Shown: positions 6,901-29,464 of the stretch, in pieces
How positions within the stretch are numbered: the stretch's first letter is position 1
Layout: the number at the start of each line of letters is the position of its first letter
DNA from: Ranitomeya imitator
Lineage: Eukaryota
DNA length: 64,000 bases
NCBI RefSeq assembly: GCF_032444005.1
Contig: NC_091283.1
Location: 474,796,001 to 474,860,000 of the forward strand
Direction: 5' to 3'
The notes under the pieces: generated by a model
Seen by the model: only the letters and a program-made list of their open reading frames with translations
Told to the model about the DNA's origin: nothing
Databases searched by the model: none
Translations under genes and position numbers: made by a program

Positions 6901-9027
6901 TTCTGATGTAACACGTTCAGCTATCAGTGGTTTGTTCTGAGTCTATATTAATATCGCTTTGTTTATAACAGGGCATTTGAACAAGCACACAGGTCAGACA
7001 GCAAGAGCAGAGAGCCTTGACTAGGAGACCTTCTGTGAAATCTGTGGGACTGGTGATTTATAACTGCATCTCTTCCAAAGATAAGAAGGAGGAGAAGGGG
7101 GATGGCCAGCTAAATGCTACATAAATATCAATGGGCTGAAAAGAGGTGGCTGGTATGTTAAGAGTTAACCTCTCCCTCTGGAATATAACTACTATGCATT
7201 CTTGGCCAGGCAATAGAGGCTCAATGGAAACCACCTGTACATTATAAAAGATAAAAATTCTCATTGTAGGAGAATGACAGCAGATTGAAAAAGCAAGTAA
7301 ATTGAAAACTTGCTTATTTTTATACTGTCCAACTATGCCTAAACTCATATTCTTCCACATTCCACTATAAACATGGAACCTCAGTTTCATCAAACATTCA
7401 TGTTTATTCCAAGTAAGACAAGAAAATTTTTTTTGACAGGATTATCTATGCCCCAATTACCGTTAGAGAAGAATTTGGTGATCCCATGAACATAAATTTG
7501 CCTGGTCTCACCAAAATGAGGAGGTTTGGACAACTTTCATCTAATGTGTGTGTGGCTGGAGATACAAAGTAACCACTCAACTGAAATCACATGCACTTCT
7601 CTAACATGCACTTTTTTACAACAGAGCTTGTGCCATATTTCAATAGACAAGGGAAAAATAAGTAAATACCGGACACTGTCTTGGGATACCAATGGGATGA
7701 AACTTAAAAAAAATCAATTTCTTAAGATCTATATGGCACCCAAAACTGGACATCAAAAGAGAATTTCATAGCCAAAATTATGTTTGTATTGAAGGTTAAA
7801 GAGTGGAAGAATTTGATTCCACCAAGATCACTCCCCGGCTGACCACATATCAGATTCCACCCACACAAGACAGGGTGATGTCATATTGTAAACCGATCTG
7901 AATAAGATGGACAGTAATCACATCCTCTCAGCGCATTGGGCATGTCACAGTGACAGAGAACACAAGTGTAAACGTTACATAGGAACAATCCACTCACAAC
8001 CTACAACATGATTTATTCATAGTTTTTTCATAATGTCAGTTTTCTCCCTATTTTTAGCACCATTCATTTCCAGCTCCGCTTGAGGACACGCTCTGATGGG
8101 CTCCATATTAAATATTACCGGAGAACGCACTTCTCCCCTTTTTTATGTGTAATAAAAATAGAAAAGGCCAATAGCAATTATATTTTGACCAATATAGAAT
8201 AACTCAGCCTCTTCTAGCCGGCATGAAGGTTAAGATAATAAATATTCTGCATAATCTACTATATAATTGTCTAAGGGTCACTTCTGTCTGTCTGTCCAGG
8301 ATATTGATTGGTCGCGGCTAGGGTTGAGCGACCTTGACCTTTTTAGAGTCGAGTCGTGTTTCGCGAAACCCGACTATCTTAGAAGTCGAGTCGAGTGGAA
8401 TCGGCCGATTATGGCGAAAAGTCGGGTATCGCCCGAAACACGAAACCCAATACAAGTCAATGGGGGAGCATAGTCGGCAGTGAGTGGAGGCCAGGAAAAC
8501 ACCTACACTGCCCATTTTAATGGCAAAAACATCCATTCTTGTTACAGAAGCTTGTCAATCGTAATTTAGCTTATAATAATTGGAAGGCATTTGAAATTGG
8601 GGGTCATTTGGCTAAAGTTGTGGGGGGTAGGGCTGGTTCAAGTAATTAGTGGGCCCAGTAAATCTGGACCACGTCACGGCAGTGGAGCAGGGAGAGGTAA
8701 GTATTTCAACTTTGCAAGTGCTGTGATCCTGAGCAAGCAGGGGGGGCCCACTCGTTGGCATTGGCACTGGCACAGGGCCCCTCAAAGTACAGCGGTGTGT
8801 TTGAGAGGCCCTGTGCCAGTGACGTCGCCAACTAGTATTCCTCCCCCCACCTGATGAAGGAACCTGCACTTTCATCTGCACCTTCCTCTTTGTCCCCGTG
8901 TAAGGTGGTATGGTATGCGGGAAGAGGAACCTGACTTTCAGCAGGGTCACAATCTTGCTGTGTAGCGTGCATGGGGAATTTTGCGTTATGGGTCAATGTA
9001 CCAGCAGACTCATCTATCACTGGCTGG

Positions 9028-10242
9028 TAGTGTTGAGCGATACCGTCCGATACTTGAAAGTATCGGTATCGGATAGTATCGGCCGATACCCGAAAAATAT
9101 CGGATATCGCCGATACCGATATCCGATACCAATACAAGTCAATGGGACATCAAGTATCGGAAGGTATTCTCATGGTTCCCAGGGTCTGAAGGAGAGGAAA
9201 CTCTCCTTCAGGCCCTGGGATCCATAGGGAGGTGTAAAATAAAGAATAAAAATAAAAAATATTGATATATTTACCTCTCCGGCGGCCCCTGGTGAGTCCG
9301 CGGGTAACCGGCAGGCTTCGTTGTTCAAAATCAGCGCTTTTAGGACCTGAGAAACACGTCCCGGCTTCTGATTGGTCGCGGGCCGCCCATGTGACCGCCA
9401 CGCGACCAATCCCAAGCCGCGACGTCACCGCAAGCTATTAACGCGCTCATTTTTAAAAATGAGCGCGTTAATGGCTTTCAAAGACGTAGCGGGTTGTGAT
9501 TGGTCGCGGCCGCGACCAATCACAAGCCGCGACGTCACCGCAAGCTATTGACGCGCTCATTTTTAAAAATGAGCGCGTTAATGGCTTTGAAAGACATAGC
9601 GGCTTGTGATTGGTCGCGTGGCCGCGACCAATCACAAGCCGCGACGTCACCGCAAGCTATTGACGCGCTCATTTTTAAAAATGAGCGCGTTAATGGCTTT
9701 GAAAGACATAGCGGCTTGTGATTGGTCGCGGCCGCGACCAATCACAAGCCGCGACGTCACCGCAAGCTATTAACGCGCTCATTTTTAAAAATGAGCGCGT
9801 TAATGGCTTTCAAAGACGTAGCGGGTTGTGATTGGTCGCGGCCGCGACCAATCACAAGCCGCGACGTCACCGCAAGCTATTAACGCGCTCATTTTTCAAA
9901 AATGAGCGCGCTAATAGCTTGCGGTGACGTCGCGGCTTGTGATTGGTCGCGTGGCGGTCACATGGGCGGCCCGCGACCAATCAGAAGCCGGGACGTGTTT
10001 CTCAGGTCCTAAAAGCGCTGATTTTGAACAACGAAGCCTGCCGGTTACCCGCGGACTCACCAGGGGCCGCCGGAGAGGTAAATATATCAATATTTTTTAT
10101 TTTAATTCTTTATTTTACACATCTCTATGTATCCGATACCGATACCCGATACCACAAAAGTATCGGATCTCGGTATCGGAATTCCGATACCGCAAGTATC
10201 GGCCGATACCCGATACTTGCGGTATCGGAATGCTCAACACTA
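9028..10242. mobile_element. hAT-type MITE nested in the outer hAT
   Basis: TIR TAGTGTTGAGC. TSD CTGGCTGG at 9020-9027 and 10243-10250. The sister copy shows the empty site with a single CTGGCTGG near 24675-24685. Subterminal CCGATAC/GTATCGG repeats. Confidence 0.95.
9405..9960. repeat. ~110-bp tandem array of CpG-rich palindromes inside the MITE
   Basis: Five copies of AAGCTATTAACGCGCTCATTTTTAAAAATGAGCGCGTTAATGGCTT alternate with four copies of TTGTGATTGGTCGCGGCCGCGACCAATCACAA. The array is enclosed by long inverted arms (~9232-9450 / ~9895-10118). Confidence 0.93.
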
Positions 10243-10289
10243 CTGGCTGGGCAATGGGCAGGATGAGGAGGAAACACAGATATAGGCCC

Positions 10290-12962
10290 AAAGAATAAAG
10301 TTGGCTAAATGCAGTTCAAAATTGGTAACACAGGACTAACCATGGGGCATTGCAGTGGAGGATAACTGGAATGAGAGGCTGACACAGAGAGTAGGCCCAA
10401 ATCAGTAAGTAGTCGAAATGCAGTTCAAAATTGGCAACCGTAGTAAACAGGCGGCACAGCTTTGTTCAGTGGAGGAGAACAGCAAGGAGTGGCAGACACC
10501 GATAGTAGGCCCCAACCCAACTAGTAGGCCAAATGCAGTCTAACATTAACAACTACTTAACGAGAGCCTGAAAATGGAATTTCAGGACAGGAAACCAGGA
10601 GAACAGCAAGGAGTGGCAGACACCGATAGTAGGCCCCAAACAAACTAGTACGCCAAATGCAGTTGTTCCATTTAACCACAATTTAATGAGAGCCTGAAGA
10701 TAGAAGTTCATGAAAGGCAACCTGGAGAACACCTTGGAGTGTAACACACCATCTCTCTACACCCCATACCCAATTTGTAGGTCTAATGCAGTGTAGTTTC
10801 CAACAACTACTAAACGAGAGCCGGAAGATCGAAGCTCAGGAAAGGCAACCTGGAGAACACCTTGGAGTGGAACACACCATCTCTCTACACCCCATACCCA
10901 ATTTGTAGGCCTAATGCAGTGTATTTTCCAACAACTACTAAACGAGAGCATTAAGATCGAAGCTCAGGAAAGGCAACCTGGAGCACACCTTGGGGAGGCA
11001 GACACCGTTAGTAGGCCCTACCAAAGTTGTACCCCCAATGCAGTTTTAAAATTCCTAGAGGCTGAAAACAAGACTATTGACGCTCAGCTTTTTTCAAAGG
11101 AACACAGCTGAATTGAGTGGCGCAGACAGACACAGGTAGTAGGACTTAAACCAAAAATGTGGCTCACTGCAGCTTAAAAAAGTTACAGGGGTACACAAGC
11201 AGCAGTGCTCTGGGCAGTGGAGGACAATTTCAATAGTGGACCGCAGACAGACTTTGTACGCCTACTATTAAAAAAAAAGATGCTCTATGCAATTAAAAAT
11301 AGGTTCCAGGGGTCCACGGGCAGCAGTGGTGTGGTCAGTGGACGAGTATTGGAAGGAGGGACCGCAGACAGGCGTAGTAGGCCTAACATAACAAAATTAG
11401 GCTGTAGACACTGTAAAATTGGTTCCAGGGGTACACGGGCAGCAGTGGTGTGGTCAGCGGAGGAAAATTGGAATTAGGGACTGCAGACAGACTTTGTAGG
11501 CTGTCCCCTGTGGACCATGCATCCAACACATTAACCCAGTGCGCCGCAATGGACACGTAACTTTTTGTGGACATGCCTACTGGTCCATGCGTCTTTTGTC
11601 AGGTGCACCTTTCTACTGTTTGATTGCCTGAGTGCTATGACAATGCAGACTTTTTCATGCCGGTGGAGGGCTGGGATGGCTTTTCTCGCAAAAGAAATGT
11701 CGACTGGGTAGCTTGAACCGTTGCACAGCGTAGTTCATCTGGGCTTTCTTAATATAAAACAAAGAAAAAAAGGAGGCTACATGCACTTTCAGCTGGGTTC
11801 CAGGGGTACACGGCCAGCATTGGTCTGGTCAGTGGAGAACTATTGGAAGGAAGGACCGCAGACACGCTTCGAAGGCCTAACATAATAACAGATGGCTGTA
11901 GGCAATTTAAAATTGGTTCCGTGGGTACACGGGCAGCAGTGGTGTGGTCAGTGGAGGCCTAGTGGAAGGAGTGACCGCAGACAGGCATCGAAGGCCTAAC
12001 ATAATAACACATTGCTGTTGGCAATTTTAAATTGGTTCCAGGGGAACACGGGCAGCAGTGGCCTGGTCAGTGTAGTAGTAGTAGAAAGAACGGACCGCAG
12101 ACAGGCATCGAAGGCCTAAAATAAAAAAATTGGGCTGGCTGTAGGCAATTTTAAATTGGTTCCAGGGGTACACGGGCAGCAGTGGTGTGGTCAGTGGAGG
12201 CCTAGTGGAAGGAGTGACCGCAGACAGGCATCGAAGGCCTAACATAATAACACATTGCTGTTGGCAATTTTAAATTGGTTCCAGGGGAACACGGGCAGCA
12301 GTGGCCTGGTCAGTGTAGTAGTAGTAGAAAGAACGGACCGCAGACAGGCATCGAAGGCCTAACATAATAACACATGGCTGTAGGCAATTTTAAATTGGTT
12401 CCGTGGGTACACGGGCAGCAGTGGTGTGGTCAGTGGAGGCCTAGTGGAAGGAGGGACCGCAGACAGGCTTCGAAGGCCTAACATAAAAAAATAGGGCTGT
12501 TGGCAATTGAAAATTGGTTCCAGTGGTACAAGGGCAGCAGTACAATGGTCAGTGGAGGCCTAGTGGAAGGAGGGACCGCAGACAGGCATCGAAGGCCTAA
12601 CATAATAACACATGGCTGTAGGCAATTTTAAATTGGTTCCGTGGGTACACGGGCAGCAGTGGTGTGGTCAGTGGAGGCCTAGTGGAAGGAGGGACCGCAG
12701 ACAGGCTTCGAAGGCCTAACATAAAAAAATAGGGCTGTTGGCAAATTAAAATTGGTTCCAGTGGTACAAGGGCAGCAGTACAATGGTCAGTGGAGGCCTA
12801 GTGGAAGGAGGGACCGCAGACAGGCTTCGAAGGCCTAACATAAAAAAATAGGGCTGTTGGCAATTTAAAATTGGTTCCAGGGGTACACGGGCAGCAGTAC
12901 AATGGTCAGTGGAGGCCTAGTGGAAGGAGGGACCGCAGACAGGCTTCGAAGGCCTAACATAA
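10290..12962 (-). repeat. 3' subterminal ~120-bp tandem arrays of the outer hAT
   Basis: About ten well-preserved units containing GGGCAGCAGT...GACCGCAGACAGGC.TCGAAGGCCTAA (11800-12962), with more diverged related units towards 10290. Confidence 0.9.
11502..11748 (-). pseudogene. Diverged hAT transposase fragment embedded in the tandem array
   Basis: Direct, diverged copy of ~15251-15500. Broken translation gives KAQMNYAVQRFKLPSRHFF, VHLTKDAWTSRH and YVSIAAHWVNVLDAWSTGDS. Confidence 0.9.
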
Positions 12963-13426
12963 CAAAAATGTCAATACAATGGTATTGTCAGTGCCAGGCA
13001 TTGAAGGATGTCAGCGCATAGACTAAACATTGGTGGAGCTGTGAGAGATAATTTTGCAAGTGGTAGAGCACTGTTTGAGCTGGGGGGGGGAACAGTCTTG
13101 TGGCCGGCGGTACAGGCCCAGGGCCCCTCATATTACAACGGTGTGTCTGATGTTGGGTGCGCACCACCACCGCCAGAGACACTTTATTGTACTAGGAGGG
13201 ACCCAGTGGCAGTGCCGTCGACCAAAAGCGGGCACACCCACCTCTTTAGACAAACAGCACTCTCACGGGTGCTGGCGCCAAGTGGCGATGCCACGGCCCC
13301 GTGTGGGGAGTTTGGCCATTTAGTGAGGTGTAAACATGTCGTATGCTGGACAATCAGGTGCAGAAAATTACGAGATTGGAAAAGTCATTCAGAATAGTCC
13401 ACAGGCAAGACCTTTTCATAGGAAAG

Positions 13427-15944
13427 CTAGGTGTCAGCCGGGCAAGGTGGGGCAAAAGATTTCGAAATCCAGTTGTGGTTCATTTTAATGAAGGTTAGAT
13501 CATCTACATTTTGGGTAGCCAGACGAGTCCTTTTTTCTGTTAGTATTGAACCTGCAGCACTGAATACTCTTTCTGATAGGACACTAGCTGCCGGGCAAGC
13601 AAGCTCCTGCAATGCATATTCTGCCAATTCTGGCCAGGTGTCTAATTTGGATGCCCAGCAATCAAATGGGAATGACGGTTGAGGGAGAACGTCGATAAGG
13701 GATGAAAAATAGTTTGTAACCATACTGGACAAATGTTGTCTCCTGTCACTTTGAATTGATGCTGCAGTACCTGTCCTGTCTGCGGTCATAGCAAAATCAC
13801 TCCACAACCTGGTCAGAAAACCCCTCTGGCCAACGCCACTTCTGATTTCTGCCCCTCTAACACCTCTGGTCTGCTGGCCCCTGCAGCTCGTGTGAGAACG
13901 ATCACGGGCGCTGTGTGCAGGGAATGCCAGAAGCAAACGGTCAACAAGAGTTGATTGTTTGGTTGCTAATATTAGTTCCAAGTTCTCATGTGGCATTATA
14001 TTTTGCAATTTGCCTTTATAGCGAGGATCAAGGAGGCAGGCCAACCAGTAATCGTCATCGTTCATCATTTTAGTAATGCGTGTGTCCCTTTTGAGGATAC
14101 GTAAGGCATAATCCGGCATGTGGGCCAAAGTTCCTGTTCTCAAATCTGCGGTTGTGCTTGGTTGAGGGGCAGTTTCAGGCAAATCCACGTCACTTGTGTC
14201 CCTCAAAAAACCAGAACCCGGCCTTGCCGCGCCAACAATTTCCAGTGGCCCCGGAAAAGCTTCCTCATTAAAAATATAATCATCCCCATCATCCTCCTCG
14301 TCCTCCTCCTCCTCTTCGCCCGCTACCTCGTCCTGTACACTGCCCTGGCCAGACAATGGCTGACTGTCATCAAGGCTTTCCTCTTCCTCAGCTGCAGACG
14401 CCTGATCCTTTATGTGCGTCAAACTTTGCATCAGCAGACGCATTAGGGGGATGCTCATGCTTATTATGGCGTTGTCTGCACTAACCAGCCGTGTGCATTC
14501 CTCAAAACACTGAAGGACTTGACACATGTCTTGAATCTTCGACCACTGCACACCTGACAACTCCATGTCTGCCATCCTACTGCCTGCCCGTGTATGTGTA
14601 TCCTCCCACAAAAACATAACAGCCCGCCTCTGTTCACACAGTCTCTGAAGCATGTGCAGTGTTGAGTTCCACCTTGTTGCAACGTCTATGATTAGGCGAT
14701 GCTGGGGAAGGTTCAAAGAACGCTGATAGGTCTGCATACGGCTGGAGTGTACGGGCGAACGGCGGATATGTGAGCAAAGTCCACGCACTTTGAGGAGCAG
14801 GTCGGATAACCCCGGATAACTTTTCAGGAAGCACTGCACCACCAGGTTTAAGGTGTGAGCCAGGCAAGGAATGTGTTTCAGTTGGGAAAGGGAGATGGCA
14901 GCCATGAAATTCCTTCCGTTATCACTCACTACCTTGCCTGCCTCAAGATCTACAGTGCCCAGCCACGACTGCGTTTCTTTCTGCAAGAACTCGGACAGAA
15001 CTTCCGCGGTGTGTCTGTTGTCGCCCAAACACTTCATAGCCAATACAGCCTGCTGACGTTTGCCAGTAGCTGCCCCGTAATGGGAGACTTGGTGTGCAAC
15101 AGTGGCAGCTGCGGATGGAGTGGTTGTGCGACTGCGGTCTGTGGACGAGCTCTCGCTTCTGCAGGAGGACGAGGAGGAGGAGGAGGGGGTGCGAACGGCT
15201 ACAGCCAACTGTTTCCTAGACCGTGGGCTAGGCAGAACTGTCCCAAACTTGCTGTCCCCTGTGGACCCTGCATCCACAACATTCACCCAGTGTGCCGTGA
15301 TGGACATGTAACGTCCCTGGCCATGCCTACTGGTCCATGCATCTGTTGTCAGGTGCACCTTTGTGCTCACAGATTGCCTGAGTGCATGGACGATGCGCTC
15401 TTTAACATGCTGGTGGAGGGCTGGGATGGCTTTTCTGGAAAAAAAGTGTCGACTGGGTAGCTCGTAGCGTGGTACAGCGTAGTCCATCAGGGCTTTGAAA
15501 GCTTCGCTTTCAACTAACCGGTAGGGCATCATCTCTAACGAGATTAGTCTAGCTATGTGGGCGTTCAAACCCTGTGTACGCGGATGCGAGGCTAAGTACT
15601 TCCTTTTTCTAACCATAGTCTCATGTAGGGTGAGCTGGACTGGAGAGCTGGAGATCGTGGAACTAGCGGGGGTGCCGGTGGACATGGCAGACTGAGAGAC
15701 GGTGGGAGATGGTATTGTTGCCGCCGGTGCCCTAGATGCAGTGTTTCCTACTACGAAACTGGTGATTCCCTGACCCTGACTGCTTTGGCCTGGCAAAGAA
15801 ACCTGCACAGATACGGCAGGTGGTGCAGAAAATGGTGGCCCTACACTGCCGGAAGGGATGTTGCGTTGATGACTAGCTTCATTGGCCGAGGCTGCTACAA
15901 CCTTAAGGGACGTTTGGTAGTTAGTCCAAGCTTGCAAATGCATG
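13427..15944 (-). pseudogene. Outer hAT transposase, C-terminal 838 aa (interrupted by the inner copy)
   Basis: Open frame with VHLTTDAW (D), VVSDNG (D), CLAH (CxxH), TRWNST, SVLSERVFS (E) and the hATC dimerisation region. It joins 25432-26480 in frame once 15945-25431 is removed. Confidence 0.95.
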
Positions 15945-16109
15945 GTGGTTAATAGGGTTGAGCGAAACGGGTCGTTCATTTTCAAAAGTCGCCGACTTTT
16001 GGCAAAGTCGGGTTTCATGAAACCCGATCCGACCCCTGTGCGGGGTCGGCCATGCGGTACGCGACTTTCGCGCCAAAGTCGCGTTTCAATGACGCGAAAA
16101 GCGCCATTT

Positions 16110-16240
16110 CTCAGCCAATGAAGGTAAACGCAGAGTGTGGGCAGCGTGATGACATAGGTCCTGGTCCCCACCATCTTAGAGAAGGGCATTGCAGTGATTG
16201 GCTCGCTGTCTGCGGCGTCACAGGGGCTATAAAGGGGAGT
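16110..16240 (+). promoter_or_regulatory. Putative transposase promoter of the inner copy
   Basis: CCAAT at 16115, ATTGG at 16197 and TATAAA at 16228, in a CpG-rich 5' end facing the transposase ORF. Motif evidence only. Confidence 0.45.
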
Positions 16241-18369: not shown

Positions 18370-21300
18370 ATGAGGAAGTATGGTGGAAGAGGTCGTGGCC
18401 GGGGGCGTTCATTGTCAGCTGGTAATGAGGGTAGTGGTAGTGGTGGAGCATCAGTTGGTCGTGGGAAAAAAAATATTGCACCTAAGTCTGGAGCTGTGGA
18501 GCCAGGTTCGTCGTCTGGCTACACAAGGCCTCGAACGCTCCCTTTTCTGGGAGTAGGAAAACCGCTTTTAAAGCCGGAGCAGCAAGAGCAAGTTTTGGCT
18601 TATCTTGCTGACTCAGCCTCTAGCTCTTTTGCCTCCTCTCGTGAAACTGGTAAATGTCAAAGCAGCGCGTCGTTAGTGGATGTTCATGGTCAGGGACAAG
18701 TCGCTTCCTTGTCCTCTTCAGCAAAAACAACAACAGAGAAGAATGCAGCAGGCGACAACGGGTTACTCCACGGAGCTCTTTACACATACCGTCCCTGGCT
18801 TAGAAAGTGAAGCAGTTAACAGTCCATGCCCATTACAAGTTGAATCTGACATGGAGTGCACTGATGCACAGCCACAGCCAGACTACTATGCTGGTCCTTT
18901 GACTCAGACCACAACATTGCCCTCGCAGGGTGCTGATCAAGAATCAGACCCTGATGAGACTATGTTGCCCCATCACGAACGCTATACCACCGACCGACAC
19001 GGTGACACAGACGAAGTTGCACACGAGCTACAAGAAGAGGTAATAGATGACCCAGTTCTTGACCCCGATTGGCAGCCATTGGGGGAACAGGGTGCAGGCG
19101 GCAGCAGTTCTGAAGCGGAGGAGGAGGGGCCGTAGCAGGCATCAACATCGCAACAGGTTCCATCTGCCGGGCCCGTATCTTGCCCAAAACGCGTGGCAAA
19201 GCCAAAACCTGTTGGAGGACAGCATGGCCATCCGGTTAAAGCTCAGTCTGCAATGCCTGAAAAGGTATCCGATGCTAGAAAGAGTGCAGTCTGGCATTTT
19301 TTTAAACAACATCCAATTGATCAGCGCAAAGTCATCTGTCAAAAATGTTCAACTACCTTAAGCAGAGGACAGAATCTGAAAAGTCTCAATACAAGTTGCA
19401 TGCATAGACATTTAACCACCATGCATTTGCAAGCCTGGACTAACTACCAAACGTCCCTTAAGGTTGTAGCACCCTCGGCCAATGAAGCTAGTCAGCAACG
19501 CAACATCCCTTCCGGCAGTGTAGGGCCACCATTTTCCGCACCACCTGCAGTATCTGTGCAGGTTTCTTTGCCAGGCCAAAGCCGTCAGGGTCAGGGAATC
19601 ACCAGTTTCGTAGTAGGAAACACTGCATCTAGGGCACCGGTGGCAACAATACCATCTCCCACCGTCTCTCAGTCTGCCATGTCCACCGGCACCCCCGCTA
19701 GTTCCACGATCTCCAGCTCTCCAGTCCAGCTCACCCTACATGAGACTATGGTTAGAAAAAGGAAGTACTTAGCCTCGCATCCGCGTACACAGGGTTTGAT
19801 CGCACACATAGCTAAACTAATCTCGTTAGAGATGATGCCCTACCGGTTAGTTGAAAGCGAAGCTTTCAAAGCCCTGATGGACTACGCTGTACCACGCTAC
19901 GAGCTACCCAGTCGACACTTTTTTTCCAGAAAAGCCATCCCAGCCCTCCACCAGCATGTTAAAGAGCGCATCGTCCATGCACTCAGGCAATCTGTGAGCA
20001 CAAAGGTGCACCTGACAACAGATGCATGGACCAGTAGGCATGGCCAGGGACGTTACGTGTCCATCACGGCACACTGGGTAAATGTGGTGGATGCAGGGTC
20101 CACAGGGGACAGCAAGTTTGGGACAGTTCTGCCTAGCCCACGGTCTAGGAAACAATTGGCTGTAGCCGTTCGCACCCCCTCCTCCTCCTCTTCGTCCTCC
20201 TGCAGAAGCGAGAGCTCGTCCACAGACCGCAGTCGCACAACCACTCCATCCGCAGCTGCCACTGTTGCACACCAGGTCTCCCATTATGGGGCAGCTACTG
20301 GCAAACGTCAGCAGGCTGTATTGGCTATGAAGTGTTTGGGCGACAACAGACACACCGCGGAAGTTCTGTCCGAGTTCTTGCAGAAAGAAACGCAGTCGTG
20401 GCTGGGCACTGTAGATCTTGAGGCAGGCAAGGTAGTGAGTGATAACGGAAGGAATTTCATGGCTGCCATCTCCCTTTCCCAACTGAAACACATTCCTTGC
20501 CTGGCTCACACCTTAAACCTGGTGGTGCAGTGCTTCCTGAAAAGTTATCCGAGGTTATCCGACCTGCTCCTCAAAGTGCGTGGACTTTGCTCACATATCC
20601 GCCGTTCGCCCGTACACTCCAGCCGTATGCAGACCTATCAGCGTTCTTTGAACCTTCCCCAGCATCGCCTAATCATAGACGTTGCAACAAGGTGGAACTC
20701 AACACTGCACATGCTTCAGAGACTGTGTGAACAGAGGCGGGCTGTTATGTTTTTGTGGGAGGATACACATACACGGGCAGGCAGTAGGATGGCAGACATG
20801 GAGTTGTCAGGTGTGCAGTGGTCGAAGATTCAAGACATGTGTCAAGTCCTTCAGTGTTTTGAGGAATGCACACGGCTGGTTAGTGCAGACAATGCCATAA
20901 TAAGCATGAGCATCCCCCTAATGCGTCTGCTGATGCAAAGTTTGACGCACATAAAGGATCAGGCGTCTGCAGCTGAGGAAGAGGAAAGCCTTGATGACAG
21001 TCAGCCATTGTCTGGCCAGGGCAGTGTACAGGACGAGGTAGCGGGCGAAGAGGAGGAGGAGGACGAGGAGGATGATGGGGATGATTATATTTTTAATGAG
21101 GAAGCTTTTCCGGGGCCACTGGAAATTGGTGGCGCGGCAAGGCCGGGTTCTGGTTTTTTGAGGGACACAAGTGACGTGGATTTGCCTGAAACTGCCCCTC
21201 AACCAAGCACAACCGCAGATTTAAGAACTGGTACTTTGGCCCACATGGCGGATTATGCCTTACGTATCCTCAAAAGGGACACACGCATAACTAAAATGAT

Positions 21301-21937
21301 GAATGATGACGATTACTGGTTGGCCTGCCTCCTTGATCCTCGCTATAAAGGCAAATTGCAAAATATAATGCTACATGAGAACTTGGAACTAATATTAGCA
21401 ACCAAACAATCAACTCTTGTTGACCGTTTGCTTCTGGCATTCCCTGCACACAGTGCCCGTGATCGTTCTCACACGAGCTGCAGGGGCCAGCAGACCAGAG
21501 GAGTTAGAGGGGCAGAAATCAGAAGTGGCGTTGGCCAGAGGGGTTTTCTGACCAGGTTGTGGAGTGATTTTGCTATGACCGCAGACAGGACAGGTACTGC
21601 AGCATCAATTCAAAGTGACAGGAGACAACATTTGTCCAGTATGGTTACAAACTATTTTTCATCCCTTATCGATGTTCTCCCTCAACCGTCATTCCCATTT
21701 GATTACTGGGCATCAAAATTAGACACCTGGCCAGAATTGGCAGAATATGCATTGCAGGAGCTTGCTTGCCCGGCAGCTAGTGTCCTATCAGAAAGAGTAT
21801 TCAGTGCTGCAGGTTCAATACTAACAGAAAAAAGGACTCGTCTGGCTACCCAAAATGTAGATGATCTAACCTTCATTAAAATGAACCACAACTGGATTTC
21901 GAAATCTTTTGCACCACCTTGCCCGGCTGACACCTAG
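18370..21937 (+). pseudogene. Inner hAT transposase with frameshift and premature stop in its N-terminal region
   Basis: Relative to the outer copy: a 2-bp deletion near 18756 (GGCGACAACGGG vs GGCGACACAACGGG) and CAG>TAG at 19133-19135. The downstream frame is open to 21937. Confidence 0.92.
19253..21937 (+). CDS. Residual 894-aa ORF (from MPEKVSD) with complete BED, DDE and hATC motifs
   Basis: First in-frame ATG after the nonsense codon. All catalytic motifs are present. Expression is not shown. Confidence 0.55.
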   Translation: MPEKVSDARKSAVWHFFKQHPIDQRKVICQKCSTTLSRGQNLKSLNTSCMHRHLTTMHLQAWTNYQTSLKVVAPSANEASQQRNIPSGSVGPPFSAPPAVSVQVSLPGQSRQGQGITSFVVGNTASRAPVATIPSPTVSQSAMSTGTPASSTISSSPVQLTLHETMVRKRKYLASHPRTQGLIAHIAKLISLEMMPYRLVESEAFKALMDYAVPRYELPSRHFFSRKAIPALHQHVKERIVHALRQSVSTKVHLTTDAWTSRHGQGRYVSITAHWVNVVDAGSTGDSKFGTVLPSPRSRKQLAVAVRTPSSSSSSSCRSESSSTDRSRTTTPSAAATVAHQVSHYGAATGKRQQAVLAMKCLGDNRHTAEVLSEFLQKETQSWLGTVDLEAGKVVSDNGRNFMAAISLSQLKHIPCLAHTLNLVVQCFLKSYPRLSDLLLKVRGLCSHIRRSPVHSSRMQTYQRSLNLPQHRLIIDVATRWNSTLHMLQRLCEQRRAVMFLWEDTHTRAGSRMADMELSGVQWSKIQDMCQVLQCFEECTRLVSADNAIISMSIPLMRLLMQSLTHIKDQASAAEEEESLDDSQPLSGQGSVQDEVAGEEEEEDEEDDGDDYIFNEEAFPGPLEIGGAARPGSGFLRDTSDVDLPETAPQPSTTADLRTGTLAHMADYALRILKRDTRITKMMNDDDYWLACLLDPRYKGKLQNIMLHENLELILATKQSTLVDRLLLAFPAHSARDRSHTSCRGQQTRGVRGAEIRSGVGQRGFLTRLWSDFAMTADRTGTAASIQSDRRQHLSSMVTNYFSSLIDVLPQPSFPFDYWASKLDTWPELAEYALQELACPAASVLSERVFSAAGSILTEKRTRLATQNVDDLTFIKMNHNWISKSFAPPCPADT

Positions 21938-22410: not shown

Positions 22411-23582
22411 TAGGCCTTCGATGCCTGTCTGTGGTCACTCCTTCCACTAGGCCTCCACTGACCACACCACTGCTGCCCGTGTACCCCTGGAACCAATTTA
22501 AAATTGCCTACAGCCATGTGTTATTATTTTAGGCCTTCGATGCCTGTCTGCGGTCACTCCTTCCACTAGGCCTCCACTGACCACACCACTGCTGCCCGTG
22601 TACCCCTGGAACCAATTTAAAATTGCCTACAGCCATGTGTTATTATTTTAGGCCTTCGATGCCTGTCTGCGGTCACTCCTTCCACTAGGCCTCCACTGAC
22701 CACACCACTGCTGCCCGTGTACCCCTGGAACCAATTTAAAATTGCCTACAGCCAGCCCAATTTTTTTATTTTAGGCCTTCGATGCCTGTCTGCGGTCCAT
22801 TCTTTCAACTACTACTACACTGACCAGGGCACTGCTGCCCGTGTACCCCTGGAACCAATTTAAAATTGCCTACAGCCATGTGTTATTATTTTAGGCCTTC
22901 GATGCCTGTCTGTGGTCACTCCTTCCACTAGGCCTCCACTGACCACACCACTGCTGCCCGTGTACCCCTGTAACCAATTTAAAATTGCCTACAGCCATGT
23001 GTTATTATTTTAGGCCTTCGATGCCTGTCTGCGGTCACTCCTTCCACTAGGCCTCCACTGACCACACCACTGCTGCCCGTGTACCCCTGGAACCAATAAT
23101 AAAATTGCCTACAGCCATGTGTTATTATTTTAGGCCTTCGATGCCTGTCTGCGGTCACTCCTTCCACTAGGCCTCCACTGACCACACCACTGCTGCCCGT
23201 GTACCCCTGGAACCAATTTAAAATTGCCTACAGCCAGCCCAATTTTTTTATTTTAGGCCTTCGATGCCTGTCTGCGGTCCATTCTTTCAACTACTACTAC
23301 ACTGACCAGGGCACTGCTGCCCGTGTACCCCTGGAACCAATTTAAAATTGCCTACAGCCAGCCCAATTTTTTTATTTTAGGCCTTCGATGCCTGTCTGCG
23401 GTCCATTCTTTCAACTACTACTACACTGACCAGGGCACTGCTGCCCGTGTAGCCCTGGAACCAATTTAAAATTGCCTACAGCCATGTGTTATTATTTTAG
23501 GCCTTCGATGCCTGTCTGTGGTCACTCCTTCCACTAGGCCTCCACTGACCACACCACTGCTGCCCGTGTACCCCTGGAACCA
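22411..23582 (+). repeat. 3' tandem array of the inner hAT (10 units of ~120 bp)
   Basis: TAGGCCTTCGATGCC at 22411, 22530, 22649, 22772, 22892, 23011, 23131, 23254, 23378 and 23498. Two unit types in the order AAABAAABBA. Confidence 0.95.
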
Positions 23583-23902
23583 ACATCAGAAAATATAAAA
23601 ATAAGTATTTTGCTTATAAAAAAGAAAATACTGGAGAGATATCAAATGCAGACATTTTAACATTAAAAACAAACACATACAACAAAAATCTGGTACAGTA
23701 CTAAAAATGGCCACCAGCTACAATAACTTTCTCCTGCAAGTAGTTAACTGAAAGGTTTTTTCAATTTTAAACACAGATATGGCATCCACCGAGTGTTGTC
23801 CTGTCGCGTCTTCTTTATATTATTGCCAAGAAGATGCAAAACAATGAAAATAATAAAATCATTATTTACCAAAAAAATAGAGTAAGTCAAAACCACATTG
23901 CA

Positions 23903-23999
23903 AATAAACATTCATTACAAATAAAGAAGCAGGGCGCGTCCGAGGGTGAGTATATACCTAATAAGAATATAATCACCCTCGGACGCGCCCTGCTTCTTT
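23903..23999 (+). terminator. Two AATAAA signals followed by a perfect 27-bp stem-loop
   Basis: AATAAA at 23903 and 23920. Stem AAAGAAGCAGGGCGCGTCCGAGGGTGA (23923-23949) pairs with 23973-23999 around a 23-nt loop. The structure is certain; the 3'-end function is inferred. Confidence 0.45.
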
Positions 24000-25431
24000 C
24001 CGACAGCCTTCCTTCCTAAGAATCAGCCCTTCCGTGGTGTAGAGAGAGGGTTTGTTACACTCCAAGGTGTTCCCCAGGTTGCCTTTCCTGAGCTTCGATC
24101 TTCCGGCTCTCGTTTCGTAGTTGTTGGAAACTACACTGCATTAGGCCTACAAATTGGGAATGGGGTGTAGAGAGATGGTGTGTTCCACTCAAAGGTGTTC
24201 TCCAGGTTGCCTTTCCTGAACTTCTATCTTCAGGCTCTCATTAAATTGTGGTTAAACGGAAAAACTGCATTTGGCGTACTAGTTGGTTTGGGGCCTACTA
24301 TCGGTGTCTGCTACTCCTTGCTGTTCTCCTGGTTTCCTGTCCTGAAATTCCGTTTTCAGGCGCTCGTTAAGTAGTTGTTAATGTTAGACTGCATTTGGCC
24401 TACTAGTTTGGTTGGGGCCTACTATCGGTGTCTGCCACTCCTTGCTGTTCTCCTCCACTGAACAAAGCTGTGCCGCCTGTTTACTACGGTTGCCAATTTT
24501 GAACTGCATTTCGACTACTTACTGATTTGGGCCTACTCTCTGTGTCAGCCTCTCATTCCAGTTGTCCTCCACTGCAATGCCCCCTGGTTATTCCTGTGTT
24601 ACCAATTTTGAACTGCATTTAGCCAACTTTATTCTTTGGGCCTATATCTGTGTTTCCTCCTCATCCTGCCCATTGCCCAGCCAGTGATAGATGAGTCTGC
24701 TGGTACATTGACCCATAACGCAACATTCCCCGTGCACGCTACACAACAACATTGTGATCCTGCTGAAAGTCAGGTTGCTCTTCCCGCATACCATACCACC
24801 TTACACGGGGACAAAGAGGAAGGTGCAGATGAAAATGCAGGTTCCTTCATCAGGTGGGGGGAGGAATACTAGTTGGCGACGTCACTGGCACAGGGCCTCT
24901 CATAGTACGCAAAAGTGTTGCTGCCGGTGGGAGGCGCCCCCGCCGTGCAAACACACCGCTGTACTTTGAGGGGCCCTGTGCCAGTGCCAATGCCAACGAG
25001 TGGGCCCCCCCTGCTTGCTCAGGTTCACAGCACTTGCAAAGTTGAAATACTTACCTCTCCCTGCTCCACTGCCGTGACGTGGTCCAGATTTCCTGGGCCC
25101 ACTAATTACTTGAATCAGCCCTACCCACCACAACTTTAGCCAAATGACCCCCAATTTCAAATGCCTTCCAATTATTATAAGGTAAATTACGCTTGACAAG
25201 CTTCATTAAGAAGAATGGATGGTTTTGACATTACAATGGGCACTCTAGGTGTTTTCCTGGCCCCCACTCACTGCCGACTATGCTCCCTCATTGACTTGCA
25301 TTGGGTTTCGTGTTTCGGTCGATCCCGACTTTACGTCATAATCGGCCGATTTCACTCGACCCGACTTTTGAGATAGTCGGGTTTCGCGAAACCCGGCTCG
25401 ACTCTAAAAAGGTCAAGGTCGCTCAACTCTA

Positions 25432-26480
25432 GTGGTTAAATGTCTATGCATGCAACTTGTATTGAGACTTTTCAGATTCTGCCCTCTGCTTAAGGTAGTT
25501 GAACATTTTTGACAGATGACTTTGCGCTGATCAATTGGATGTTGTTTAAAAAAATGCCAGACTGCACTCTTTCTAGCATCGGATACCTTTTCAGGCATTG
25601 CAGACTGAGCTTTAACCGGATGGCCACGCTGTCCTCCAACAGGTTTTGGCTTTGCCACGCGTTTTGGGCAAGATACGGGCCCGGCAGATGGAACCTGTTG
25701 CGATGTTGATGCCTGCTGCGGCCCCTCCTCCTCCGCTTCAGAACTGCTGCCGCCTGCACCCTGTTCCCCCACTGGCTGCCAATCGGGGTCAACAACTGGG
25801 TCATCTATTACCTCTTCTTGTAGCTCGTGTGCAACTTCGTCTGTGTCACCGTGTCGGTCGGTGGTATAGCATTCGTGATGGGGCAACATAGTCTCATCAG
25901 GGTCTGATTCTTGATCATTACCCTGCGAGGGCAATGTTGTGGTCTGAGTCAAAGGACCAGCATAGTAGTCTGGCTGTGGCTGTGCATCAGTGCACTCCAT
26001 GTCAGATTCAACTTGTAATGGGCATGGACTGTTAACTGCTTCACTTTCTAAGCCAGGGACGGTATGTGTAAAGAGCTCCATGGAGTAACCCGTTGTGTCG
26101 CCTGCTGCATTCTTCTCTGTTGTTTTTGCTGAAGAGGACAAGGAAGCGACTTGTCCCTGACCGTGAACATCCACTAACGACGCGCTGCTTTTACATTTAC
26201 CAGTTTCACGAGAGGAGGCAAAAGAGCTAGAGGCTGAGTCAGCAAGGTAAGCCAAAACTTGCTCTTGCTGCTCCGGCTTTAAAAGCGGTTTTCCTACTCC
26301 CAGAAAAGGGAGCGTTCGAGGCCTTGTGTAGCTAGACGACGAACCTGGCTCCACAGCTCCAGACTTAGGTGCAATATTTTTTTTCCCATGACCACCTGAT
26401 GCTCCACCACTACCACTACCCTCATTACCAGCTGACAATGAACGCCCCCGGCCACGACCTCTTCCACCAGACTTCCTCAT
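25432..26480 (-). pseudogene. Outer hAT transposase, N-terminal 350 aa including most of the BED zinc finger
   Basis: MRKSGGRGRGRGR... AVWHFF..VICQKC..MHRHLTT, continuing as MHLQAW at 15943. Joined length is 1049+2518=3567 nt, or 1188 aa plus stop, with no internal stop. Confidence 0.95.
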
Positions 26481-26689
26481 TGTTTTAAAAACGTAACCAA
26501 ACTAACGGTAATGTGTTGCTGTCACACAACTTACATGGTGAGCTATAACTTCAGTATGATTTAGCTACCCCTTTACAGGTGGGTGAGACCGCAAGGAAAA
26601 TCAGGCACAATGTTACACACTCTGTTTTTGGTGGCAACAAATGAGAGAGATGCCACACACGCAGGACTGTCACTGAAGCACAAATGTAA

Positions 26690-28050
26690 ATATTAATCTC
26701 CCACTGATTTGTTTTTTTTTGTTTTTTTCAGGGAGACTTTAGAAAAAAAAATAGAATAAAATGATTTTTTAAGGAAGAATTTAGAAACCAAATAAAATAA
26801 AATGATTTCTTCAGGGAGAATTTAGAAAACAAATAAAACAAAAAATAGGCTTTCTATGGCCCACTGAGTGAGAGATGACGCACACAGGAGTCAGGAGTGG
26901 CACACAAGCCCAGAGGCCAATATTGTTCTCCCAATGATTGATGTAGTGATTTGTTCAGGTAGATTTTGGAACCCAAATCAAGCAAAAAAAATAATAGGCT
27001 TTCTATGGCCCACAATTGGAGAGAGAGAGAGAGAGAGATGGCACACCCAGGAGTCAAGACTGGCACACAAGCAGAAAGGGCAATATTAATCTCCCACTGA
27101 TTTGATTTTTTTTTTTTTTTCAGGGAGACTTTAGAAAAAAAAATAGAATAAAATGATTTTTTCAGGAAGAATTTAGAAACCAAATAAAATAAAATGATTT
27201 CTTCAGGGAGAATTTAGAAAACAAATAAAACAAAAAAAAGGCTTTCTATGGCCCACTGAGTGAGAGATGACGCACACAGGAGTCAGGAGTGGCACACAAG
27301 CCCAGAGGCCAATATTTATCTCCCACTGATTGATTTATTGATTTTTTCAGGTAGAATTTAGAACCCAAATCAACCAAAAAAATAAATAGGCTTTCTATGG
27401 CCCACTATTTGTGAGAGAGATGGCACGCTCAGGACTGGCACACAAGCCCAGAGGCCAATATTAATCTCCCACTTTTTTTTTTTTTTATTCAGGGAAAATT
27501 TATAAACCCAATAAAATAAATAATAAATATGCTTTCTATGGCCCACTATCTGAGAGAGAGAGATGGCACGCTTAGGACTGGCACACAAGCCCAGAGGCCA
27601 ATATTAATCTCCCACTGATTTATTGATTTTTTCAGGTAGAATTTAGAACCCAAATAAAGCAAAAAAAAAAAATAGGCTTTCTATGGCCCACTGAGTGAGT
27701 GATGATGCACACAGGAGTCAGGAGTGGCACACAAGCCCTGAGGCCAATATTTTTCTCCCACTGATTGATGTAGTGATTTTTTCAGGTAGATTTTGGAACC
27801 CAAATCAAGCAAAAAAATAAATAGGCTTTCTATGGCCCATTGAGTGAGAGATGGCACACACAGGAGTCAGGAGTGGCACACAAGCCCTGAGGCCAATATT
27901 TTTCTCCCACTGATTGATGTAGTGATTTTTTCAGGTAGATTTTAGAACCCAAATCAAGCAAAAAAATAAATAGGCTTTCTATGGCCCACTGAGTGAGAGA
28001 TGGCACAGACAGGGATGGCACTCTAGCAGAAATGCCAATCTTAATTTCCC
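26690..28050 (-). repeat. 5' tandem array of the outer hAT (8 units)
   Basis: Anchor TATGGCCC at ~26855, 27004, 27247, 27396, 27537, 27682, 27831 and 27980. Confidence 0.92.
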
Positions 28051-28494
28051 ACAAAAAAAAAAGGAACTGTCCTTCAATTACTATCTCCCTGCAGTAATCT
28101 CAGCCAGGTATGGCAGGCAGCAATAAGGAGTGGACTGATGCACAAATTAAATAAAAAGTGTGGACAAACATACAAGATAGCTGTGCAGAAAGGAAGGAAC
28201 AAGAGGATTTGTGCTTTGAAAAAAGCAGTTGGTTTGCACAGCGGCGTACACACAGCAATGCAGCTATCAGGGAGCCTTCTAGGGCAGCCCAATGAGCTAC
28301 AGCGCTGAGGAAAAAAAAAATGTAGCTTCCACTGTCCCTGCACACCGAAGGTGGTGTTGGACAGTGGAAATCGCTACAGCACAAGCGGTTTGGTGGTTAA
28401 TGGACCCTGCCTAACGCTATCCCTGCTTCTGACGAAGCGGCAGCAACCTCTCCCTAAGCTCAGATCAGCAGCAGTAAGATGGCGGTCGGCGGGA

Positions 28495-28625
28495 ACGCCC
28501 CTTTATAGCCCCTGTGACGCCGCAGACAGCAAGCCAATCACTGCAATGCCCTTCTCTAAGATGGTGGGGACCAGGACCTATGTCATCACGCTGCCCACAC
28601 TCTGCGTTTACCTTCATTGGCTGAG
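28495..28625 (-). promoter_or_regulatory. Putative transposase promoter of the outer copy
   Basis: Mirror image of 16110-16240: TTTATA at 28502 and CCAAT-box motifs near 28534 and 28616. Confidence 0.45.
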
Positions 28626-29464
28626 AAATGGCGCTTTTCGCATCATTGAAACGCGACTTTAGCGCGAAAGTCGCGTACCGCATGGCCGACAACGCACAGG
28701 GGTCTGATCGGGTTTCATGAAACCCGACTTTGCCAAAAGTCGGCGACTTTTGAAAATGAACGACCCGTTTCGCTCAACCCTAGTCGCGGCCTCTGTGTGT
28801 CATGGAATCCAAGTCGCTGATTGGTCGTGGCAAAACGCCCATGACCATTGCCACGACCAATCAGCGACGGGCACAGTCTGGCGGCAACATGGCCGCTCCT
28901 TCTTTCCCGCAGTCCGGGCCCGCTCCGTACTCCCCTCCAGTCAGCGCTCACACAGGGATAATGGCAGCGCTAATGGACCGTGTTATGTCGCGGTGTAACG
29001 CACTCCATTAACGCTGCTATTAACCCTGTGTGACCAACTTTTTTACTATTGAGGCTGCCTATGCAGCCTCAATAGTAAAAAGATCTAATGTTAAAAAAAG
29101 TAAAAAATCATCATATACTCACATTCCGGCGTCTTTCCCGCTCCTTGCGACGCTCCGGTAACAGCTCCATGCAAGCGGCAGGTTCCGGTGGCAAGGATGG
29201 TATGCGACAAGGACCTGCCATGATGTCAATGTCATGTGACTGCGACGTCATCACAGGTCCTGCGAGAAAGACCTGCCATGATGTCACGGTCATGTGACCG
29301 CAACGTCATCACAGGTTCTGCACCCATATCAACCCTGGGACCGGAAGCTGCCGCGTGCACCGCACACAGGGTCAGGACTTCAACGGAGGGTGAGTATATG
29401 TTTATTTTTTATTTTAAGTCGGTATACTACATGGCTCTGTGCTGTATACTCCGTTGCTTTGCAG

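What the first reader, a model, noticed from the sequence alone, without database searches (positions are those of the whole stretch)
8319..28782. A vertebrate double-Ds: full-length hAT inserted inverted into a sister copy of itself
Seen: inner element 15953-25431 (TSD GTGGTTAA) lies in opposite orientation inside outer element 8319-28782 (TSD GTCGCGGC). It splits the outer 1188-aa ORF between the two His residues of the BED finger. The copies differ by only about 12 aa over the 838-aa C-terminal part. All four ends are present. This gives two pairs of directly oriented 3' and 5' ends (8319 with 15953; 25431 with 28782). Established: in maize this nested inverted arrangement is double Ds, McClintock's chromosome-breaking state, where transposase acting on directly oriented ends of sister chromatids makes dicentric and acentric products. 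Inference: this locus could be a transposase-dependent breakage or rearrangement site, and could also move as a 20.5-kb macrotransposon. I know of no described animal counterpart built from near-autonomous elements, but could not search.
Basis: partly seen in the sequence, partly recalled or inferred. Interest (0 to 1): 0.9.

Follow-up and report, generated by a model that had tools for sequence, protein, structure and literature searches.

The report
Frog hAT transposon nested in itself
A 9.5-kb cut-and-paste (hAT) jumping gene of a poison frog sits upside down inside another copy of its own, very abundant family, giving the same layout as maize "double Ds", but nothing shows that the site breaks chromosomes.

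Summary
The outer hAT is 8319-28782, with perfect 12-bp TIRs and TSD GTCGCGGC. It carries an inverted copy of the same family at 15953-25431 (TSD GTGGTTAA). That copy is inserted exactly between the two zinc-binding His residues of the BED finger of an otherwise open 1188-codon transposase ORF. All four ends keep their subterminal motifs.

Three corrections apply.
1. The copies are not replication "sisters". The 838-codon C-terminal part has 21 synonymous and 12 non-synonymous differences (dN/dS 0.17, p about 1e-6), so they diverged as functional lineages before nesting.
2. The inner copy has a -2 frameshift and a nonsense codon. Neither copy now encodes full-length transposase.
3. A third, small hAT (9028-10241, TSD CTGGCTGG) lies in the outer copy only.

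The genome is Ranitomeya-like, and the family is extremely abundant there: more than 100,000 contig pieces at 95% likeness or better were laid on 6 kb. A same-family nest is therefore expected by chance. Reads hint at another one.

Both TSD pairs are intact, so no aberrant transposition has happened on this haplotype. The double-Ds topology is real. Breakage, macrotransposition and hairpin silencing remain untested potential.

This is a new instance of a known kind, of modest interest.

The parts
8311..8318 (.). left copy of the outer element's 8-bp target site duplication, GTCGCGGC
   Evidence: identical octamer at 28783-28790
8319..15944 (-). outer hAT, 3' part: 3' TIR TAGGGTTGAGCG (8319-8330), subterminal motifs, tandem arrays (119-, 128-nt units), and the C-terminal 838 codons of the transposase
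9028..10241 (.). third, small non-autonomous hAT-like element. TIR TAGTGTTGAGCG / GCTCAACACTA, TSD CTGGCTGG at 9020-9027 and 10242-10249. Present in the outer copy only; the inner copy has the empty site with one CTGGCTGG
13427..15943 (-). outer transposase, C-terminal 838 codons plus stop. Catalytic core with TTDAWTS, SDNGRNF, CLAHTLNL, TRWNS and SERVFS motifs, plus the hAT dimerisation domain
15945..15952 (.). left copy of the inner element's TSD, GTGGTTAA
15953..25431 (+). inner hAT of the same family, inverted relative to the outer. 5' TIR TAGGGTTGAGCG at 15953, 3' TIR with one mismatch (TAGAGTTGAGCG on the - strand) at 25420-25431
18370..21937 (+). inner transposase gene, broken by a -2 frameshift at about 18755-18757 and CAG->TAG at 19133-19135. 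There is also a +3 in-frame insertion. The 914-codon remainder from 19193 still holds the BED finger, core and dimerisation domain
19412..19419 (.). single TTAACCAC in the uninterrupted inner copy, at the position corresponding to the site hit in the outer copy
   Evidence: arms I1 and I2 overlap by these 8 nt
25432..25439 (.). right copy of the inner element's TSD, GTGGTTAA
25432..26480 (-). outer transposase, N-terminal 349 codons, ending inside the BED finger (...CMHRHLT)
26481..28782 (-). outer 5' leader with 149-/392-nt arrays, CpG-rich 5' subterminal region and 5' TIR (28771-28782)
28783..28790 (.). right copy of the outer TSD, GTCGCGGC

Best explanation
This is an ordinary, recent nested insertion within a very high-copy hAT family of a Ranitomeya-type poison frog.

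A member of about 9.5 kb, from a slightly different lineage of the family, was cut and pasted in inverted orientation into the BED-finger codons of a member of about 11 kb. The event made the canonical 8-bp duplication and killed the host copy's transposase gene. A small unrelated-cargo hAT also landed in the host copy.

The composite has the exact topology of maize double Ds: four ends and two directly oriented 5'/3' pairs. In principle it is a substrate for alternative transposition, for movement as one 20.5-kb unit, and for hairpin RNA formation. On this haplotype none of these has left a trace.

Shown: the anatomy, the family membership, the pre-nesting divergence, the youth of the event and the abundance of the family. 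Inferred: that the nest arose by chance or local hopping, and that it is currently inert or only a potential substrate.
For: - **Canonical insertion signatures.** Three elements have TIRs plus perfect 8-bp TSDs. The outer is exactly collinear with the inner after removing the insert and one TSD. Read contigs show the uninterrupted state at 15952 in other copies.
- **hAT identity.** zf-BED and Dimer_Tnp_hAT are found. Hermes transposase structures match at E about 1e-16, with the D, D, CxxH, RW and E motifs aligned. The TIR fits YARNG.
- **Divergence before nesting.** dS 0.037, dN 0.006, 21 synonymous against 12 non-synonymous differences, binomial p 8.7e-7. Non-coding blocks differ by 3-5% and the CDS by 1.3%.
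- **Youth.** The outer ORF is still open over 1188 codons apart from the insertion, and the TSDs are perfect.
- **Abundance.** 121,159 and 102,698 contig pieces at 95% likeness or better were laid on 6 kb from two DNA runs of the same organism, and 55,840 from another species. The best protein hits are chimeric Ranitomeya imitator gene models at 94-98% identity. The scan has 68 hAT notes in this genome.
- **Other nests.** A joint 14058->15953, linking a family TIR end to another CDS position, appears in X1 and X2.
Against: - No read or contig spanning a nest junction was shown. The only hint is that one run holds 3 of 5 sampled junction-region words where every other run holds at most 2.
- The copy number is not measured, so 'expected by chance' is semi-quantitative.
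- hAT local hopping, rather than random insertion, could equally have made the nest.
- RNA-library contigs identical to the CDS suggest that the family may still be expressed, so 'inert' is not proven.
Confidence: 0.8

Rival explanations
1. The site is an active double-Ds-like breakage or rearrangement site. Transposase from intact family members pairs the directly oriented 3' and 5' ends (8319 with 15953, or 25431 with 28782) on sister chromatids. This makes chromatid bridges, breaks, and flanking deletions or inverted duplications. Alternatively the transposase moves the whole 20.5 kb as one unit.
For: - The topology matches the substrate of sister-chromatid transposition described for Ac/Ds (PMC3744419; PMC7584900).
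- All four ends keep their TIRs and subterminal GAAACCCGA / AAGTCGGG motifs.
- The family looks recently active: open ORF, dN/dS 0.17, perfect TSDs.
- RNA-library contigs match the CDS perfectly over about 100 nt.
- Other notes in this scan report hAT elements of 21-25 kb that moved as units (not checked here).
Against: - Both TSD pairs are intact, and no rearrangement ends at the TIRs here.
- Neither resident copy encodes full-length transposase.
- The inner 3' TIR has a mismatch at position 4.
- Ac/Ds end choice depends on strand-specific methylation after replication (PMC3744419), and this is unknown for animal hATs.
- In maize, nested Ds elements are rare, and this is thought to reflect selection against them (PMC3260210). 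The survival of this nest therefore argues for low activity.
Confidence: 0.1
2. The site is a hairpin-RNA (Mu-killer-like) silencing locus. A transcript started at the outer 5' end reads through the inverted inner copy. It folds into a 2.5-kb stem (13400-15952 with 19412-21964, 99% complementary) plus a 0.66-kb stem. These feed small-RNA pathways that silence the whole family.
For: - The near-perfect long inverted arms are shown.
- In maize, an inverted duplication of Ac made by alternative transposition triggers siRNA silencing (bioRxiv 10.1101/2020.01.07.897926). Mu killer works through a hairpin of about 4 kb (PMC3440606).
- The same stretch was independently noted this way (s1-307421; unchecked).
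- RNA-library contigs cover the region.
Against: - No RNA contig was shown to cross a nest junction.
- There is no small-RNA data.
- The RNA run shows no A>G excess that would suggest dsRNA editing, though family-wide mixing makes this uninformative.
- In so abundant a family, many other antisense sources must exist, so this locus would not be special.
- Vertebrate germlines rely mainly on piRNA clusters (general knowledge).
Confidence: 0.12
3. True double-Ds origin: the element inserted into its own just-replicated sister copy, so the two were identical at birth.
For: Double Ds elements are said to form through local hops of Ac/Ds (PMC7584900). The copies are 98-99% alike.
Against: The 33 CDS differences are strongly biased to synonymous sites (21:12 against a neutral expectation of about 8:25, p 8.7e-7). 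Decay after nesting cannot produce that bias. The array copy numbers also differ.
Confidence: 0.04
4. Assembly artefact: two separate family copies were wrongly joined.
For: The family is very repetitive, so assemblers are at risk. No spanning read was shown.
Against: - A false join would not create full TIRs flanked by a perfect 8-bp duplication on both sides.
- It would not leave the outer ORF exactly in frame once the insert is removed.
- The copies differ by about 2%, enough for accurate long reads to separate them.
- There are no N runs in the window.
Confidence: 0.03

Closest known systems
Maize double Ds (chromosome-breaking 'state I' Ds of McClintock; Doring et al. 1989, Weil and Wessler 1993, English et al. 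1993, as cited in PMC7584900 and PMC3744419)
   Same: Both are in the hAT superfamily. One copy sits inside another copy of the same family in inverted orientation. There are four ends and two directly oriented 5'/3' end pairs a few kb apart.
   Different: Double Ds is built from two identical 2-kb deletion derivatives, and its breakage is shown genetically. Here the copies are 9.5 and 11 kb, near full length, 2% diverged and from different lineages. They carry satellite-like arrays, and no breakage is shown. The host is a vertebrate.
Drosophila P-element hybrid element insertion and self-insertions (Gray et al. 1996, Preston et al. 1996, cited in PMC3744419; self-insertions in PMC4744444; head-to-head P dimers in PMC5932611)
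   Same: This is an animal case in which ends of two copies of one DNA transposon family lying close together are used together, or in which an element lands in its own kind.
   Different: It belongs to the P superfamily, not hAT, and was demonstrated experimentally. No natural vertebrate locus is involved.
Mu killer and the Ac inverted duplications that trigger silencing in maize (PMC3440606; bioRxiv 10.1101/2020.01.07.897926)
   Same: A long inverted duplication of transposase sequence that could be transcribed into a hairpin.
   Different: Those loci are shown to make siRNAs and to silence the family in plants. Here there is no small-RNA evidence, and the host is an animal with different pathways.
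Ordinary nested transposon insertions in repeat-rich genomes (for example Ds-l4 inside Ds-l3-15 in maize B73, PMC3260210)
   Same: An insertion with TSD of one element inside another, as a by-product of amplification.
   Different: Here host and guest belong to the same family and lie in inverted orientation, which gives the special end geometry.

Membership tests
hAT superfamily DNA transposon | 8-bp target site duplication | tested here: met
   GTCGCGGC, GTGGTTAA and CTGGCTGG flank the three elements
hAT superfamily DNA transposon | short terminal inverted repeats beginning YARNG | tested here: met
   The 12-bp TIR is TAGGGTTGAGCG. It has 5 matches in the window against 0.13 expected
hAT superfamily DNA transposon | transposase with BED finger, RNase-H-like DDE core with CxxH and RW motifs, and the C-terminal hAT dimerisation domain | tested here: met
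   Pfam zf-BED and Dimer_Tnp_hAT are found. Hermes structures match at E 1e-16, with SDNGRNF, CLAHTLNL, TRWNS and SERVFS aligned to the Hermes counterparts
double Ds-type composite | two copies of one family, one inserted inside the other | tested here: met
   The TSD-flanked inner copy interrupts an outer copy that is collinear with it
double Ds-type composite | inverted relative orientation, giving directly oriented 5' and 3' ends of different copies | tested here: met
   The ORFs lie on opposite strands. The TIR reads on the + strand at 8319 and 15953, and on the - strand at 25431 and 28782
double Ds-type composite | the two copies are identical products of one element (self-insertion into the replicated sister) | tested here: not met
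   There is 2.1% divergence, with dN/dS 0.17 and p 8.7e-7
double Ds-type composite | transposase-dependent chromosome breakage at the site | not testable with these tools
   This needs genetics, cytology or deep long-read data. The intact TSDs show only that this haplotype is unrearranged
Mu-killer-like hairpin silencer | long inverted duplication of transposon sequence | tested here: met
   The arms are 2553 nt and 665 nt, both 99% complementary
Mu-killer-like hairpin silencer | read-through transcript and derived small RNAs that silence the family | tested here: inconclusive
   RNA-library contigs lie on the region, but none was shown to cross a junction and there are no small-RNA data

The most novel reading that the evidence does not exclude
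In a vertebrate whose genome carries thousands of copies of a still-expressed hAT family, inverted self-nests like this one may be natural double-Ds-type substrates. With trans-supplied transposase they would cause chromatid breaks, flanking deletions or duplications, and 20-kb macrotranspositions. Alternatively, they may be the hairpin sources that shut the family down. Either way, the maize phenomena could be studied in a frog.
Probability: 0.07. Interest if true: 0.75.

Novelty: new member of a known kind. Interest (0 to 1): 0.3.

Why it matters
If the family is active, this locus and others like it would be natural vertebrate substrates for alternative transposition. That mechanism is well established for Ac/Ds in maize and for P elements in flies, but I found no report of it for a native vertebrate hAT. 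It could contribute to structural variation in giant amphibian genomes.

As it stands, the locus is mainly a clean, datable example of how densely and how recently this hAT family has been inserting. It also gives a useful internal clock: host ORF still open, guest copy with two lesions, dS 0.037 between lineages.

Tried and rejected
- **Fetching other family copies.** The aim was to look for intact ORFs and count nests. The look-up of encoding contigs on P0001 and P0006 returned places but no DNA because the files were too large.
- **Junction-specific run search.** A 60-nt query held too few indexed words. A 90-nt query gave 5 words. One run (X2) holds 3 of them and all others hold 2 or fewer, which is suggestive but not proof.
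- **Read laying.** So many family contigs were laid that the tables were truncated, and no junction-spanning piece was listed. This cannot count as absence.
- **Copy number from summed word depth.** Rejected, because the tool states that the figure is not a copy number.
- **Paralogous empty site for the outer element.** BLAST found only short matches. By eye, a related repeat at 59360-59480 has a single GTCGAGGC at the corresponding place, which is weak support only.
- **Literature searches for a vertebrate double-Ds-like hAT.** Searches found none. This is absence in that library, not proof of novelty.
- **Sister-chromatid self-insertion origin.** Rejected on dN/dS.
- **Misassembly.** Rejected as unlikely because of the TSDs and the frame continuity.
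Full report
**1. The observation**

- At 8311-8330 the sequence is GTCGCGGC followed by TAGGGTTGAGCG.
- At 28771-28790 it is CGCTCAACCCTA followed by GTCGCGGC.
- At 15945-15964 it is GTGGTTAA followed by TAGGGTTGAGCG.
- At 25420-25439 it is CGCTCAACTCTA followed by GTGGTTAA.

The 12-mer, allowing one mismatch, occurs five times in the window against 0.13 expected. Four of these are the ends named. The fifth, at 9028, turned out to be a third element (section 2).

The repeat finder gives inverted arms 13400-15952/19412-21964 (2553 nt, 99%) and 25432-26096/18755-19419 (665 nt, 99%), plus further arms down to both termini. The first two arms overlap by exactly 8 nt (19412-19419, TTAACCAC) in the inner copy. 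That is what a target-site duplication predicts.

I removed 15945-25431 in silico for comparison only. The outer is then collinear with the reverse complement of the inner along its whole length. The outer is 10,977 nt without the insert, and the inner is 9,479 nt.

In public contigs of the same organism, sequences reaching 15952 continue with ATGTCTATGCATGCAACTTGTAT, which is window 25440 onward (loose ends). Other family copies are therefore uninterrupted at this site.

**2. A third element**

The only large outer-specific segment, 9028-10241, has its own ends, TAGTGTTGAGCG...GCTCAACACTA. It has its own 8-bp duplication, CTGGCTGG, at 9020-9027 and 10242-10249. The inner copy shows the empty site with one CTGGCTGG.

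It is a small non-autonomous hAT-like element with different subterminal repeats (TATCGG type), a 242-nt internal inverted repeat and a 110-nt array. Subtracting it leaves 9,755 nt against 9,479 nt. The remaining difference comes from array copy number.

**3. The genes**

The outer ORF lies on the - strand. It has 349 codons from 26480 to 25432, ending ...SCMHRHLT. It has one codon split by the insertion, then 838 codons from 15943 to 13430 beginning MHLQAWT. The total is 1188.

The uninterrupted inner copy reads ...CMHRHLTTMHLQAWT.... The insertion therefore lies between the two His of the H-x4-H half of the BED finger. Pfam finds zf-BED in the N-terminal piece, cut at profile position 39 of 44, and Dimer_Tnp_hAT in the C-terminal piece.

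Hermes transposase structures match at E about 1e-16. SDNGRNF, CLAHTLNL, TRWNS and SERVFS align to the Hermes catalytic D, CxxH, RW and E motifs. These motifs and TTDAWTS are present in both copies.

The inner gene (+ strand, start 18370) carries three changes:
- a +3 in-frame insertion;
- a -2 frameshift, GGCGACAACGG against the outer's GGCGACACAACGG, at about 18755-18757;
- CAG->TAG at 19133-19135.

Contigs with the unshifted state at 18757 exist in the genome (loose end in X1). Neither resident copy can now give full-length transposase. The inner retains a 914-codon open stretch that includes the BED finger, the core and the dimerisation domain.

**4. Relationship of the two copies**

Over 5,700 nt of gapless blocks there are 119 mismatches (2.1%). 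The CDS differs by 1.3% and non-coding blocks by 3-5%. Twenty-four mismatches fall at CpG sites.

In the 838 C-terminal codons there are 21 synonymous and 12 non-synonymous differences: dS 0.037, dN 0.006, ratio 0.17. With 77% of sites non-synonymous, 12 of 33 has binomial p 8.7e-7.

This pattern cannot arise by decay after nesting, because the outer gene was dead from that moment. Most of the divergence therefore predates the nest. The two are members of distinct, then-functional lineages of one family, not replication sisters as in the classical origin of double Ds.

The nest itself looks young. This is inference. Apart from the insertion, the outer ORF has no stop or frameshift in 3,564 nt. 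I assume roughly 4% of substitutions create stops and that frameshifting indels occur at about a tenth of the substitution rate. The open ORF then bounds neutral change since the insertion at about 0.7% per site (95% limit).

**5. Whose genome, and how common is the family**

The best protein matches are chimeric gene models of Ranitomeya imitator at 94-98% identity, followed by R. variabilis at 76-88%. More distant 'ZBED4/6-like' hAT proteins come from other frogs. Earlier notes of this scan call the genome poison-frog-like and list 68 hAT notes, several on 15-25-kb array-carrying hATs (not checked here).

I laid contigs of two DNA runs of the same organism on 13400-19399. This placed 121,159 and 102,698 pieces at 95% likeness or better. 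A DNA run of another species placed 55,840. At roughly 80 nt per piece, that is on the order of a thousand distinct sequence variants over every position, so the family has at least thousands of copies.

With such coverage, insertion of one member into another is expected several to many times per genome under random insertion alone, and half of those would be inverted. hAT local hopping would add more. A contig joint 14058->15953 seen in both X1 and X2 has only 22 nt on its short side. It fits another locus where a family 5' end abuts a different CDS position in the same relative orientation.

No other family copy lies elsewhere in this window.

**6. Is the nest real DNA?**

I could not show a spanning read. 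The junction-region search gave one run (X2, possibly the assembly's own sample) with 3 of 5 sampled words, while every other run held 2 or fewer. The read laying tables were truncated by the mass of family contigs.

The sequence itself argues strongly against a false join:
- both sides have complete TIRs;
- the 8-bp duplication is perfect;
- the reading frame is exactly continuous;
- the copies differ by 2%;
- the window has no N runs.

**7. What it can do**

This section rests on established knowledge, cited from papers.

[quoted passage not shown] Reversed-ends transposition gives deletions, inversions and duplications. Drosophila P elements do the analogous hybrid element insertion (PMC3744419). 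Double Ds elements are said to form through local hops (PMC7584900). In the B73 maize genome, nested Ds are rare and no double Ds was found, which the authors attribute to selection against breakers (PMC3260210).

Here the outer 3' end (8319) and the inner 5' end (15953) are directly oriented and 7.6 kb apart. The inner 3' end (25431) and the outer 5' end (28782) are directly oriented and 3.35 kb apart. All four ends keep the subterminal GAAACCCGA and AAGTCGGG motifs, which occur nowhere else in the window. The inner 3' TIR has one mismatch.

The geometry is therefore right. What is missing is any evidence of action. Both TSD pairs are intact, nothing in the window ends at a TIR in an unexpected way, and transposase would have to come from elsewhere.

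RNA-library contigs match the CDS without a mismatch over about 100 nt. The RNA-to-DNA depth ratio is several-fold higher over the 5' arrays than over the CDS. That argues against pure DNA carry-over, but it does not show an intact message.

**8. The rival consequence: a hairpin**

A transcript from the outer 5' end that reads through would contain the inner gene in antisense, followed by the outer C-terminal part in sense. This gives a 2.5-kb, 99% stem.

In maize, such inverted Ac duplications and Mu killer trigger small-RNA silencing (bioRxiv 10.1101/2020.01.07.897926; PMC3440606). The same stretch was noted this way by another first-stage note. I have no small-RNA data and no junction-crossing RNA, so this too is only potential.

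**9. Context**

The outer element itself sits in another repeat. A related copy at 59360-59480 shows the same 'tatataattg.ctaaggg...ctgtctgtc...gattggtcg' series with a single GTCGAGGC where the outer's GTCGCGGC duplication lies.

**10. Verdict**

It is wrong about sisterhood and unproven about function.

In a genome where this family is so abundant, the nest is best read as an expected by-product of amplification that happens to have the double-Ds layout. I found no described natural vertebrate hAT counterpart in the searched library. The mechanism class is known in animals through P elements.

I score it as a new member of a known kind with modest interest. The interesting experiment is the genome-wide census of such nests and a search for breakpoints at their ends.

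Noticed in passing
window 9028-10241: A small non-autonomous hAT-like element with a TIR one base off the big family's (TAGTGTTGAGCG) and TSD CTGGCTGG. Its subterminal repeats are TATCGG-type. It has a 242-nt internal inverted repeat (9218-9459 / 9893-10134) and a 110-nt palindromic array (9401-9951). It is present in the outer copy only.
   Followed up: partly
window 11500-11693 versus 15251-15443: A fragment of about 190 nt of the transposase coding region (83-87% identical, same orientation) lies between units of the outer element's 119-nt array. It was also flagged by another first-stage note (s1-307476).
   Followed up: no
window 9401-9951, 8300-8318 and 28783-28870: The 110-nt array unit of the small element ends in GATTGGTCGCGGC. 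The outer element's left flank ends in the same 13 bases, of which GTCGCGGC is the outer's target-site duplication. The right flank is full of CCAATCA/TGATTGG palindromes. The outer element may therefore have landed in a relative of that small element or of its array.
   Followed up: partly
window 59360-59630: A repeat related to the outer element's flanks ('tatataattgcctaaggg', a CTGT run, and GATTGGTCGAGGCC...GATCAATCAGCGACGGGCACAG palindromes), present here as about two tandem units.
   Followed up: partly
window 47452-49479, - strand: Two ORFs of 292 aa and 208 aa with a Tf2-1-like SH3 match above Pfam's cut-off and a DUF4939 match below it (19.8 bits against 29). They are remains of an LTR retrotransposon. 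73-nt inverted arms at 44566-44638 and 50160-50232 bracket the region.
   Followed up: partly
window 54455-54792: A near-perfect palindrome with 168-nt arms, 94% complementary, and a 2-nt spacer. Further inverted arms lie at 54269-54390 and 54791-54912.
   Followed up: no
window 14855-15460 (+) and 19904-20509 (-): A 201-codon ORF antisense to the transposase core is open in both copies. It is probably a by-product of the codon composition of the sense frame.
   Followed up: no
window 16400-18200 (inner 5' leader arrays): In the RNA-library run X19, summed contig depth over the 149-nt arrays is 3-8 times higher relative to DNA runs than over the CDS. The arrays, or look-alikes elsewhere, may be transcribed more than the transposase gene.
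   Followed up: no
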